Below the pieces are notes generated by a model that saw nothing but the letters and a program-made list of their open reading frames with translations, had not been told where the DNA came from and made no database searches. A DNA stretch of 63,647 nt, counting the filler, from Reticulomyxa filosa (lineage: Eukaryota > Protista > Foraminifera): NCBI GenBank assembly GCA_000512085.1. It is 26 parts of 26 records of this genome, joined end to end, with 100 filler letters (N's around TTAATTAATTAA, not from the genome) between each part and the next. Parts side by side here need not be neighbours in the genome. Positions count along the whole stretch, not along the records: positions 5,868 to 10,180 come from ASPP01006023.1; 25 more parts are not named here. The stretch is one strand, 5' to 3'. Positions 5,768 to 37,110 of the stretch are shown here, one piece after another (positions within the stretch are counted from its first letter, which is position 1; every line of letters begins with the position of its first letter). The position numbers were made by a program, and so were the translations under genes.

Positions 5768-5918
5768 NNNNNNNNNNNNNNNNNNNNNNNNNNNNNNNNN
5801 NNNNNNNNNNNTTAATTAATTAANNNNNNNNNNNNNNNNNNNNNNNNNNNNNNNNNNNNNNNNNNNNATATGTATGTATACATATATATATATATATTTT
5901 TTTTTTTTTTTGCATAAC

Positions 5919-6255
5919 TTATTTGTATCCAAAGAAATAGATGTCAAATTGCTTAGATTTCCAATTTCCGGTGGTATTGTGCCAATAAAGTCATTTTGCT
6001 CGAGAAGCAAATACGCCAATCCAACAAGATTTCCAAGTTCTTTAGGTATTGTACCAGAAAACCTACAAACAAAAAAAGATCAAAATATTCAACTGTTCCA
6101 AGAGTTGGAGGGAAATGAAAAAAGCATACCGATTTCGTCCTAAATCAAAATACAGAAGGTTGATCAAATTTCCAATTTCTGGTGGGATTGTGCCACTTAT
6201 ATTACTAATATCAAACCAATAAAAGATATTATACATCAAACAAAAAATACTTTGC

Positions 6256-6286
<31 letters not shown>

Positions 6287-6975
6287 TGTATATATTTCAA
6301 CTTTGAATGCACTTGCAAATATTGTAAATTAGTCAATTTCACAATCTCTGATAGTATTGTCCCTGTCAATCTATTTATTAAAATAAGTAAGTTTTTCGTT
6401 TTTTTTTTTTTTTTTTTTATCTTAATTGGAGAGACAAAAAAACTGATTGCCATTCAATTCCAATGATCTCAATTTTGAAAGCTGGCTATTATTTTACCAA
6501 AAACAAACAAATTTCTTTCTTTTAAAAATATACTTTTTTTTTTCAAAAATACCAAATTTCGGGAGGGATAGAGCCTTTCAAAAAATTGTCTGTCAAAGCC
6601 AATTGTTGCAAATTGGTGAAATTTGCCACACAGGCAGGTATTGTTCCAAATAGGGATTGGCTATTTAGGATAATACCAATGACAGTAGATTGTCCATCTT
6701 TAGAATTACAAACCACTCCTTCAAATGAACATCCATCATTCGAGGAAATGTTCCAATCTAGTCCGTAAATTGCATCATAAAAACATAGTAGGGCATTCAT
6801 CTCAGATTCAGGCAAATCCGATGTTTGACTCACTATTGCGGTTTTATTTCAATTTGCTTACTACCAGTTTCAAACAAACAACAACAAAATAATGTAAGTT
6901 TTGAAGGAAACTGCAAAAATGAGTCCACCAAGTGCAAATGATGGTCAGCCAAAAGAAATTCAAAAGCCAAGACAT
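5919..6975 (-). CDS. Secreted or surface plant-type leucine-rich-repeat protein (3' partial)
   Basis: Signal-peptide-like exon MSWLLNFFWLTIICTWWTHFC; LRR N-cap SEMNALLCFYDA..WNISSNDGCSFEGVVC; 24-aa repeats LxGxIPPEIGNLxNLxxLxLxxN; five GT-AG introns plus a final donor site. Confidence 0.9.
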
Positions 6976-8778
6976 GTTTTATTACCGATTTAATTTAGTT
7001 TTTTTTAGAACATCTGCAGCAGCCTTTTTGTTGTTCGTCACTACGTTCACACACAACTTTGAAGCGTTAACAGGGTAGTAATAAAAAATTGAATTGAATT
7101 TTGTGTAATACCAGTAATATTGAAATTCAACTGTTTCTTTCCATTTTCGTAATTTATCTTTTCTAATTCAAAAGTTCAGGAAGATAAACTACGGGAAAAA
7201 AAGACAGAGTAATAAGTCTTTCCAAATTGTTTATTTGAAAAATATTTCCAAATTTTTCATTTTCTAAAGTTAACAAGATAAATCAAGGACGCTAAATTTG
7301 ATCCCTTTTGAAATACGTCAAAGTAAAAAAAAAAAGGGAACACTTTATTTCTGTTGTGTTTGTTTTCCTGTCATGAATAAGAAGTTACTATTTTTTTTGT
7401 ATAGAGGAAAGCCTCACATTTGCTTGGAATGTAGTAATTACTTGGTGTGAATAAGGAAACACCAAGTAAAAAAAAACACTCCTAGAGAACAAGGTTTAAT
7501 GCCTAAGAAGGATATCCCTTATTTTTCTTCACAATTGAACCTAACATTTTAATTTTTTCAAAATAGTGATTCCAAAAGGAATGATGTATTTTTTTTTAGG
7601 TTTCGCTTTTGCGGAGAAGCGAAAAAGTGGCCAAAAATTGCGTAGACATTGTAGAATACAAAATTGCTGTGTTTACTTAATCACTTTGGGTTTGTGTTGT
7701 TGTAAGCGTGAGATATTTCAAAGAACATGCAAATATTGCATAAAAGTTGTAAAACATATAGTTTTTCTAAATTGAACGGTTTTTCGTTTGAATTGATACG
7801 CTTTCAACTGACTTCAATTGTTGTTTAATTTGTTATTTATTTGCGTAAATCCTGTTCATGCATTGGGAGGGTTATGCATCGAGACTTTTTAAAAGTGGAC
7901 CCTAGAATCAATATGGTCTATCTTTCACGTCCTCTCTTTTGTTATTAGTATTTAATTTTAAAAAAGATTCGAATATAAATGAAAGACAAAAAATGAATAA
8001 CATTACAGGAATATAAATTACAAATAATTCAATTGAATTAGGAGAAAAGATATTTTATTCATTTTCTTAAAAATAATCATAATGTTTGTGCCCAGTTCAA
8101 TGTCGATATTGAACACAGATATACTGATTTAACAGTTTGAACAAGAAATAAGCGATTATTTGAATAAAAAATAATTTATTATTAGTTTGAACTATTTGGA
8201 AACACAGAATGAATCATTTCATTGTCAAGTTTTTTATCATACTTAATCTTTTCATGTACAGTATTGAAATAACAACACATGACAGGTTTGTTTGTGTGAA
8301 TAAGTTTTTTTAGTTCTCAAATTATTAAAACTTTTAACTGGTGCTGTTGTTACTTCTTGGATATATCATGGAAGTGGCACTCTTTGGCGAACCGACGAAA
8401 GTGAAGTAGAGCTATTAAAGATACGGAACAATACTTTTATTTAACAATTTTTTCATTCAGAATTGCAAATTTTATTATAAAAAAGAAAATTAGATAAATT
8501 ATTTTCATTGTATATTATGCGAATGAACAATTCTGTATCGTTATATTTTACTTTTGTCCTTATTTTTTTAATCAAATCTTTTGTTAACGTTTATTTATTA
8601 TGAGAAAATCAGTTATATACACATTCATAAATATTTATCAATAATTTGTTATTTGTTTGATTGTTAACCTTTTTTTATATATTTTGAAAATACTTAACAA
8701 AAATTGATAAATTCGTAATTATGAAATAAAAATCAAACTATAAGCATGATTAACAGATATTTAATTGTTCTTCAAAAT

Positions 8779-9976
8779 TTATTTCATTCTATTGTATTTC
8801 ATAATAATTTGATTAAAATCATCGATCCATCCTAATTTTATCTTAAAAGTTCGAGTCCAATATTGAATAATACATTTTATTTCATTTGTTGACTGTCCAT
8901 TATTTATTATTTATATTTGTGTTTTATCAAATAAATACATAAATCATTACCAACTGTGAAGAGCTCCATACGCGCAATTTAGTTTTTATGTGGGTCGATA
9001 CTACTGTCCTTTTATCTAGCCCTCCAATGATGTGTATATAATTGTCTTCTTCACTCAATATTGCAGTGCAATACTGCAATGGACTGAGTAAAGTGTTTTT
9101 AAATGTCATCCATTTGTTTTCTCGAATTGAATATTTATGCACTGACTTTGAGATAATTCGATCTGACCCAATCTTACAATTCCATCCACCAAAGAACAAA
9201 ATGACACCATTGATGCATACATATGCATAACGAAAGAATTGTTCAATATTATGACAAACAGTTAGTTGACGAAATTGAAAACTATTGCTATCTTCATCAT
9301 ATTCAATTGATAGTCCTGTCTTTTTACAAAACAGCAACATTTTGTAATTTTGTTTAATTTTTCCTTGATTTGTTTTAATCATTTCTTGACCTTGTCCATT
9401 TTCCGAGTTTGATACAAAACAATGATAATTAGTAAAATCAGTTGGTAAAATATCACGTTTAATAAATTGAAATATATTTAAATCAAATACACTAATATTC
9501 TTTGATTGATATGTGATAAATAACAAATGATTATTGCTTCCACTAACCACTGCACGCACTCCAACATAATCACCATAATTTCCTCCAATATCAATTTGAT
9601 TATTATGATTATCTGTGAAAGGAATCCATTGATTATAATTGTTTGAATTTTTTGATTTATCACTCCAAACACTTACATATTTCATCACCAATGTATGTTT
9701 ATATAATCCACCAAAAGACAATACAGTGATTTGATTGCTGTCTTTGTTGTTATTATTGCTGTTATCTACCAATTTCACTACACAGTGTCCTTTTAATTGA
9801 ACATCACTTGGATACTCACAGATAAACTTATATTCATTTTTGATTTTATGATAAGAATAACAAGCTCTTTGTTCATAACCTCCACAAATGAGGAGCTCAT
9901 GCTTGTATAGTACACATTGCACTTGATCAAGTGGAATGGGCAACTCCTTTAAAGTTTGAAAGATTTGGTTGCTCAT
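8779..9976 (-). CDS. Kelch-repeat beta-propeller protein with a separate C-terminal exon
   Basis: ORF 8927-9976 has Kelch GG motifs (LLICGGY, VLSFGG, ILFFGGW, IHIIGG). Intron 8893-8950; terminal exon 8779-8892 encodes STNEIKCIIQYWTRTFKIKLGWIDDFNQIIMKYNRMK*. Confidence 0.9.
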
Positions 9977-10387
9977 GTTGTTAATGTTGATGAACTATGA
10001 AATAGGGACTTACATGAAAAAAGTCATTCTTTTTTAAAAAAAAACATTGATTGTGTCACACAACGGCATGATTATAGTCGACAAGACTATTTTGAAAAGA
10101 GCAGAGCGATGTTTACAAAATAACAATTATGCATCAAGAATGTTATAGCGTATTAAAATATTTGTATTTTATAAAAATTTNNNNNNNNNNNNNNNNNNNN
10201 NNNNNNNNNNNNNNNNNNNNNNNNTTAATTAATTAANNNNNNNNNNNNNNNNNNNNNNNNNNNNNNNNNNNNNNNNNNNNATCAACAACAAAAAGTATGT
10301 GTATATATATATACATATAATTTATAATTTGAAAAGGAATTGTACAGACGTGAATATGTGCAAGGAAAAAAAAAAAAGACATAACAA

Positions 10388-36620: not shown

Positions 36621-37110
36621 ATGACTATTATCCCTGGTGATGAAAAAAATTTCATACAAGTAGTACAGGTAAGAATCTTACCTTTCATAATTCTAAGTTA
36701 CTTTATTGTTTTTATTATATTTTACAATTGAACTAGTCAAAAGAAGAAGATCCAAATAATTATTCAACATTGGATTCAAAAGATCAATATTAAATTAGTA
36801 TGGATCCAAGAGTTTGATAAACTGTTGCTAAATATGTTATGTCTTCGTTTTTATTCAATGACAAATATTTATTTGTTATTACCCATATTCAATATTTTAC
36901 ATAGGCAATTGCCATCTTTATGTTTGACGCATTTTGCTCATCTTAATTCAAATATTTCGTAGGCATCAGATTGGGTGAATAGATCAAAGGATCAAAACGT
37001 TCGTTTGTGGGATATTCGGTCTTGTGAACAAATTCAAGAATTCAATGGACATCATAATTATGTGACTTGTGCTGAATATTCGCCAATTATTGCGAATCCA
37101 CGTGGAAAGG
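36621..37110 (+). pseudogene. Internally deleted WD40-family pseudogene
   Basis: Exon 1 MTIIPGDEKNFIQVVQ; exon 2 (about 36737-36834) SKEE-IQIIIQHWIQKINIKLVWIQEFDKL with frameshifts; remnant SKDQNVRLWDIRSCEQIQEFNGHHNYVTCAEYSP. Confidence 0.8.

What the first reader, a model, noticed from the sequence alone, without database searches (positions are those of the whole stretch)
8779..8892. A single-exon ~35-aa module shared by Kelch (C-terminus) and WD40 (N-terminus) propeller genes: candidate new adaptor system
Seen: the Kelch gene's last exon encodes STNEIKCIIQYWTRTFKIKLGWIDDFNQIIMKY. On an unrelated contig, exon 2 of a WD40 pseudogene (36737-36834) encodes SKEE-IQIIIQHWIQKINIKLVWIQEFDKL. Both are discrete exons beginning at a phase-0 acceptor followed by TCA (Ser), yet they sit at opposite ends of two different beta-propeller folds. 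Known: short helical tags fused to expanded Kelch or WD40 families are the hallmark of cullin-RING substrate receptors (F-box, SOCS/BC-box, LisH, DCAF H-box). Inference: an exon-shuffled docking module couples many fast-evolving propellers to one shared machine, possibly a ubiquitin-based defence or proteostasis system. I do not recognise it as a named domain.
Basis: partly seen in the sequence, partly recalled or inferred. Interest (0 to 1): 0.85.

Follow-up and report, generated by a model that had tools for sequence, protein, structure and literature searches.

The report
Shared helical tag on foraminiferan propellers
In the amoeba Reticulomyxa filosa, hundreds of duplicated Kelch and WD40 propeller genes carry the same unnamed 35-residue two-helix tag, probably a handle for one shared partner; it looks inherited as the middle piece of Kelch-tag-WD40 genes rather than shuffled on its own.

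Summary
Window 8892-8779 (minus strand) is the last exon of a Reticulomyxa filosa Kelch gene (RFI_07623). It encodes a conserved, unnamed module (M). A profile finds 235 clusters at 50% identity; 29 of 30 looked up are R. filosa. Of 220 copies, 98 precede WD40, 67 follow Kelch, and 17 sit between the two in Kelch-M-WD40 genes. The window's Kelch exon, intron and M exon are collinear with those tandem genes (77.5% over 1197 nt). So the 'opposite ends' are best explained by gain or loss of propellers around a fixed middle exon, not by shuffling of M alone. AlphaFold places M outside both propellers as helix-loop-helix with low confidence. Its core residues stay conserved even where WD40 is absent. 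It fails the BC-box, Cul2-box, F-box and LisH consensus tests and has no Pfam or PDB match. No partner was shown. Best guess (0.4): a non-canonical docking box for one shared partner, most likely a cullin-ligase adaptor. Main rival (0.27): a LisH-like dimerisation hairpin. Real, unnamed, nearly lineage-restricted, function untested.

The parts
8951..9976 (-). Exon 1 of Kelch gene RFI_07623: start codon and a complete Kelch beta-propeller, including the closing strand just before the donor (342 codons)
   Evidence: ORF; Pfam Kelch hits; 376 homologs, the best 120 all R. filosa; AlphaFold model of the paralog P0122
8893..8950 (-). 58-nt phase-0 GT-AG intron, homologous to the intron in Kelch-M-WD40 genes
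   Evidence: donor GT and acceptor ACAG invariant in 7 aligned paralogs; inferred from conservation, no RNA reads available
8779..8892 (-). Exon 2: module M (33 conserved residues, 4 tail residues, stop)
8845..8889 (-). M helix 1 (exon residues 2-16; hydrophobic face at 5, 8, 9, 12, 13; Trp12 and Arg14 conserved)
   Evidence: DSSP of the AlphaFold model of P0122, residues 345-359, low pLDDT; conservation; mapped to the window by alignment
8824..8844 (-). M extended loop (residues 17-23) with near-invariant Ile18, Gly21, Trp22, Ile23
8794..8823 (-). M helix 2 (residues 24-33; Phe26, 29, 30 and Tyr33 conserved)
   Evidence: model residues 367-379
8665..8793 (-). 3' end shared by Kelch-M genes: no phase-0 donor after Tyr33, read-through to a stop within a few codons, similar 3' flank; no WD40 remnant further on
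   Evidence: tblastn of all fetched proteins against 6834-8780 empty

Best explanation
M is a short helix-loop-helix docking box that forms the fixed middle exon of an expanded R. filosa gene family built as [exon 1: short leader, Kelch or other] - intron - M - intron - [WD40 or nothing]. Shown: the three layouts, the shared introns, the position outside the propellers, and constraint on the core. Inferred: Kelch-M genes such as this one are Kelch-M-WD40 genes that lost the WD40 half. Also inferred: M's exposed hydrophobic face binds one conserved partner common to all carriers while the propellers diversify to pick substrates. The most likely partner is a cullin-RING ligase adaptor (Elongin C or Skp1 type), making these proteins non-canonical substrate receptors.
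For: Eight positions are kept in 90-99% of 220 copies at about 50-65% mean identity. Pooled dN/dS is about 0.43. Both Trp are kept in 55/56 and 56/56 Kelch-terminal copies against a rough neutral expectation of 0.67, so M matters without WD40. It occurs with either propeller, so it cannot simply pack on one of them. About 14 mostly hydrophobic columns in 33 residues and pLDDT 50-65 against 90+ for the propellers suggest a missing partner. Among Kelch folds, the top-listed structural match is KLHDC10 bound to Elongin B/C (Z 27.8, rmsd 6.2, 283 aligned; LZTR1 and YjhT tie within 1 Z), and its aligned range runs on into M helix 1. KLHDC1/2/3/10 are six-bladed Kelch BC-box receptors (PMC11568203). 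Large expansions of a short box plus a variable binding domain are typical of cullin receptors (established knowledge: plant and nematode F-box families).
Against: BC-box consensus (PMC4878042) 0/220, Cul2-box 4/220, F-box start 0/220, Pro in the loop region only 5/220. No Pfam F-box, SOCS, LisH or PRANC hit for 149 members and no meaningful PDB hit. The sequence profile's match to KLHDC proteins stops in the propeller. The structural overlap is at rmsd 6.2 in a low-confidence region. In Kelch-M pairs M is no more conserved than the Kelch domain (64.5% vs 65.5%). No interaction or expression data.
Confidence: 0.4

Rival explanations
1. M is a LisH-like (or RIIa/Dpy-30-like) helical hairpin that pairs with a second M into a four-helix bundle, so that Kelch and WD40 paralogs homo- and heterodimerise combinatorially.
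For: Length of about 34 residues and the position before WD40 match LisH in Lis1 and TBL1X (PMC12648486). Muskelin combines an internal LisH with Kelch (PMC2518711). The LisH-like helix-1 hydrophobic pattern is met in 148/220 copies (pattern from memory). Low monomer pLDDT.
Against: The LisH Gly four residues after helix 1 is present in 1/220 and the G-aromatic-x-x-small-Ala start of helix 2 in 0/220. The loop is about four residues longer. No Pfam LisH, RIIa or Dpy-30 hit. Near-invariance over hundreds of paralogs fits one outside partner better than a self-interface that can drift (inference).
Confidence: 0.27
2. M is a structural cap or linker of the WD40 unit, or the hinge between Kelch and WD40. 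In Kelch-M genes it is a leftover of truncation carried along in a burst of gene duplication.
For: Helix 2 runs straight into the first WD40 strand. Most copies precede WD40. Kelch-M genes share a derived 3' end. pN/pS among four Kelch-M copies is only about 0.74. Many family models are partial or broken.
Against: The Trp, Gly, Ile and Phe core is kept in Kelch-M copies that have no WD40. AlphaFold does not pack M confidently on either propeller.
Confidence: 0.18
3. One reading: M is a mobile symmetric exon inserted independently at the C-terminus of Kelch genes and the N-terminus of WD40 genes.
For: M is a phase 0-0 exon wherever a downstream exon exists. Kelch-M-WD40 WD40 domains are not one clade (AU p=0.023), so joins were remade more than once.
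Against: Kelch exon, intron and M are one homologous block between this gene and Kelch-M-WD40 genes. In the M-WD40 genes examined the upstream exon often ends in similar residues (Gln-Leu or Ala-Leu) at a similar donor. Partners are almost only Kelch and WD40. The one fusion to a NACHT domain joins in mid-exon, not at an intron.
Confidence: 0.1

Closest known systems
KLHDC2/3/10 CRL2 substrate receptors (Kelch propeller plus BC-box/Cul2-box)
   Same: Kelch propeller followed directly by a short helical region; top-listed Kelch structural match, range reaching M helix 1; Pfam Kelch_KLHDC2_KLHL20_DRC7 below cut-off
   Different: No BC-box or Cul2-box consensus in M; sequence match confined to the propeller; hundreds of paralogs, and the same box also sits before WD40
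LisH-WD40 proteins (Lis1, TBL1X) and muskelin (LisH plus Kelch)
   Same: About 34-residue two-helix motif next to a propeller; similar hydrophobic spacing in helix 1 (148/220)
   Different: Longer loop, Gly displaced by four residues, no small-Ala start of helix 2, two near-invariant Trp; no Pfam LisH hit
F-box-WD40 and F-box-Kelch proteins; SOCS-box WD40 (WSB) proteins
   Same: Short helical module plus propeller; lineage-specific expansion (own knowledge)
   Different: Two helices, not three; no Leu-Pro start (0/220); no Pfam F-box or SOCS hit; occurs at either end and in the middle

Membership tests
VHL-box / SOCS-box receptors | BC-box (S,T,P)LxxxC/S/Axxx-hydrophobic (PMC4878042) | tested here: not met
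   0/220 by pattern; the small residue is present in 0/220 and 1/220 in the two plausible registers
VHL-box / SOCS-box receptors | Cullin box with hydrophobic-Pro (Cul2: phi-P-x-x-phi-x-x-x-phi) | tested here: not met
   4/220; hydrophobic spacing is compatible but Gly and Ile stand where Pro is expected
VHL-box / SOCS-box receptors | Short helical box directly after a Kelch propeller | tested here: met
   (position only; rmsd 6.2)
VHL-box / SOCS-box receptors | Binds Elongin B/C and Cul2 or Cul5 | not testable with these tools
   no multimer prediction or assay available
F-box proteins | Leu-Pro-x-Glu start and three helices over about 45 residues (own knowledge); Pfam F-box match | tested here: not met
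   0/220; two helices; no Pfam F-box hit (one chance-level FBA_2 hit, E 0.07)
F-box proteins | Binds Skp1 | not testable with these tools
   -
LisH motif | Pfam LisH match or match to solved LisH chains | tested here: not met
   149 members against Pfam; profiles against PDB sequences at E<=10
LisH motif | Helix-1 hydrophobic pattern ending aromatic-hydrophobic (pattern from memory) | tested here: met
   148/220; a generic amphipathic-helix pattern
LisH motif | Gly-aromatic turn four residues after helix 1, then x-x-small-Ala (pattern from memory) | tested here: not met
   1/220 and 0/220
LisH motif | Dimerises into a four-helix bundle | not testable with these tools
   single-chain predictions only
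DCAF (DDB1-binding WD40) | H-box helix and WDxR motif | not tested
   no family model scanned specifically
Part of the Kelch or WD40 propeller | Forms a blade strand | tested here: not met
   Kelch closes at model residues 330-334 and WD40 starts at 382; M is helical between them
Exon-shuffled mobile module | Symmetric intron phase | tested here: met
   phase 0 upstream in 16/16; phase-0 GT 0 or 6 nt after Tyr33 in the 12 genomic copies that are not Kelch-terminal
Exon-shuffled mobile module | Present alone in unrelated genes with unrelated flanks | tested here: not met
   flanks collinear with Kelch-M-WD40 genes; partners essentially Kelch and WD40 only among the 150 listed hits; 85 weaker hits not shown

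The most novel reading that the evidence does not exclude
M is a new class of cullin-adaptor (or other shared-machine) docking box with its own Trp-rich consensus. Through it, several hundred Kelch, WD40 and double-propeller receptors plug into one foraminiferan degradation or defence complex, possibly via a lineage-specific adaptor.
Probability: 0.25. Interest if true: 0.75.

Novelty: new variant of a known kind. Interest (0 to 1): 0.45.

Why it matters
If M binds a ligase adaptor, it would be a substrate-receptor box that matches no known consensus and would give a function to hundreds of 'hypothetical' genes in a poorly studied eukaryotic lineage. It would be a rhizarian parallel to the F-box expansions of plants and nematodes, and one peptide pull-down could test it. 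Even if not, it is an unnamed domain worth a family model, and it corrects gene models that drop or mis-splice this exon. Its weight is limited by near restriction to one draft genome and by the lack of any functional data.

Tried and rejected
No family hit: Pfam and NCBIfam scans of M alone and of 59, 48 and 149 aligned members gave only chance-level hits. PDB sequence searches gave nothing meaningful. ESM Atlas features gave no usable hit; by structure it listed a foraminiferan WD40 cluster of 117 members at TM 0.47. AlphaFold of M alone gave one long helix and Foldseek found nothing with it, so it is uninformative. Fold searches with the tandem model were dominated by propellers. No relatives in viral, metagenome or prokaryote contigs; these scans find close relatives only. 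No sequencing run was listed, so read laying was not run and splicing and expression are unverified. No paper mentions Reticulomyxa with Kelch, and a look-up of the genome paper by a DOI recalled from memory found nothing. Trees: the Kelch tree is poorly resolved with the layouts intermixed, and the WD40 tree has no root, so the direction of gain and loss is not proven. Rejected: M as a propeller blade; M as a chance match; tandem genes as prediction artefacts (short introns on both sides of M and a WD40 exon without its own start in L001, L002, L007, L009, L012). Profile-profile comparison with LisH, SOCS, F-box or RIIa alignments was left out because no tool supplied such sequences and I did not type any from memory.

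Full report
Source and gene. The piece 5868-10180 is a 4313-base contig of the foraminiferan Reticulomyxa filosa: the minus-strand ORF 9976-8927 matches RFI_07623, and the best 120 of 376 homologs are all R. filosa proteins, named as Kelch-motif, hypothetical or, in two cases, WD-repeat or zinc-finger proteins. Pfam gives sub-threshold Kelch hits. All database searches were run exon by exon by reference, or with database proteins. only translated candidate splice joins locally to find the frame.

Observation. The exon at 8892-8779 follows an AG at 8894-8893, starts with TCA and is in phase 0. Four in-frame donors are possible. The one at 8950 is invariant in seven aligned paralogs and keeps the strand that closes the propeller in the model. 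The likely product is therefore 379 aa, not the 362 aa of the NCBI model. This rests on conservation; no reads were available.

Family. M is present in 57 of the 120 closest Kelch models. The true share is higher, because at locus L006 all three Kelch genes have the exon in DNA while at least one model (P0007) lacks it. A profile from Kelch and WD40 copies finds 235 clusters at 50% identity among 1.84 billion representatives. Of 30 proteins looked up, 29 are R. filosa. The exception, P0159, is an intronless contig from run SRR32617133 of unknown organism, with M before a WD40 domain. It suggests that at least one member is transcribed and that the family may reach beyond this genome. Among 220 ungapped copies the layouts are M-WD40 98, Kelch-M 67, Kelch-M-WD40 17, and fragments or M alone 38. 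The Kelch-M count is inflated by the way I searched. Controls separate members (29-68 bits) from non-members (at most 5.7).

Why M sits at opposite ends. In Kelch-M-WD40 genes M is the linker between the two propellers. It is an exon with short introns on both sides, and the WD40 exon has no start of its own. The window's Kelch exon, intron and M align as one block with such genes: 77.5% over 1197 nt with L001 and 73.4% over 1266 nt with L002. The intron is visibly homologous. After Tyr33, the five Kelch-terminal copies lack the phase-0 donor found in the other twelve genomic copies and share a 3' end that reads to a nearby stop. No WD40 remnant lies downstream in the window. M-WD40 genes examined have a short first exon that often ends in similar residues at a similar donor. 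The simplest reading is a three-slot gene whose middle exon stays while propellers are gained, lost or swapped. Tandem genes include divergent ones with a charged spacer before M and are spread through the Kelch tree. Their WD40 domains are not one clade (AU p=0.023, quick tree), so joins were remade more than once. Neither tree is rooted, so 'Kelch-M arose by loss of WD40' is an inference.

Anatomy and constraint. AlphaFold of a tandem protein (mean pLDDT 87) closes the Kelch propeller before M and starts WD40 after it. M is helix (345-359), extended loop, helix (367-379), with pLDDT of about 50-65. M alone folds as one helix, which is uninformative. In exon numbering, Trp12, Arg14, Ile18, Gly21, Trp22, Ile23, Phe26 and Tyr33 are kept in 215, 201, 197, 212, 218, 209, 204 and 203 of 220 copies. 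Pooled dN/dS over 16 DNA copies is about 0.43, from pairs that are not independent. Among Kelch-terminal copies chosen by their Kelch domain, the two Trp are kept in 55/56 and 56/56 against a rough neutral expectation of 0.67 on a star tree. M is therefore constrained where no WD40 follows. M is slightly more conserved than WD40 (49% vs 44%) but not more than Kelch (64.5% vs 65.5%), so 'conserved tag, fast propeller' is only mildly supported.

Mechanism. A short amphipathic hairpin with many near-invariant hydrophobic residues, poorly ordered as a monomer and attached to either propeller, most likely binds a partner (inference). I commit to one shared outside partner, most likely a cullin-ligase adaptor (0.4). 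The reasons are the expansion pattern and that the top-listed Kelch structural match is KLHDC10 bound to Elongin B/C, with an aligned range reaching M helix 1 (Z 27.8, rmsd 6.2; other Kelch folds tie within 1 Z). KLHDC proteins are known BC-box receptors (PMC11568203). This is a resemblance of position only. The rivals are LisH-like self-pairing (0.27), a structural linker left over in Kelch-M genes (0.18) and independent exon shuffling (0.1). None of the binding steps was tested.

Membership. M is not a BC-box, VHL-box or SOCS-box by the consensus in PMC4878042 (0/220 and 4/220), not an F-box (0/220), and not a LisH by Pfam or by the turn motif. It should not be filed under any of them. It may still work like one.

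Verdict. Real, unnamed, large and nearly lineage-restricted module. Novelty: new variant of a known kind. Interest 0.45; 0.75 if a new ligase box is demonstrated (probability about 0.25).

Noticed in passing
window 5870-6833, minus strand: Multi-exon leucine-rich-repeat gene with an LRRNT_2 cap and plant-type LRR units (Pfam), cut by the piece's edge; unrelated to the Kelch gene.
   Followed up: partly
window 8951-9001: NCBI model RFI_07623 uses the donor at 9001 and so drops 17 codons that include the propeller-closing strand; several paralog models skip or mis-splice the same junction or omit M.
   Followed up: yes
L011:110-1295 (P0376): A NACHT-like ORF (Pfam E 0.005) runs in frame into the middle of an M exon with no intron, near the contig end: a recombinant gene or a misassembly.
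   Followed up: partly
L009:1722-5715 (P0246): Model with M-WD40-Kelch-spacer-M-WD40; possibly two adjacent genes merged by the annotation. A further M-WD40 gene follows directly.
   Followed up: no
Kelch paralogs P0001-P0126: 36 of 100 have Met-Gly-(Asn/Ser/Gln) in the leader, a possible myristoylation signal; the window gene starts Met-Ser. Some M-WD40 genes (P0271, P0264) share the Met-Gly-Asn start.
   Followed up: partly
L003 (P0159, SRR32617133): Only non-NCBI member seen; intronless, with an N-terminal region that looks SAM-like by eye but has no Pfam hit. Organism unidentified.
   Followed up: partly
window 8430-8521: 93-nt stretch 81% identical to L001:1180-1272, far from the Kelch gene there; probably a dispersed repeat.
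   Followed up: no
window 10047-10105: About 57 nt upstream of the Kelch start are 81-86% identical in L006 and L008; a candidate promoter or 5' UTR element of the family.
   Followed up: no
WD40 domains of the family: Highly regular WD40 repeats whose best non-Reticulomyxa matches are bacterial-looking and fungal repetitive WD40 proteins; origin not examined.
   Followed up: no
not in the window (recollection only): From memory, other foraminiferan proteins carry a two-helix motif with Gly-Tyr-Ile-Arg and Ile-Pro; M's spacing resembles it. No such sequence was fetched, so this is an untested lead.
   Followed up: no
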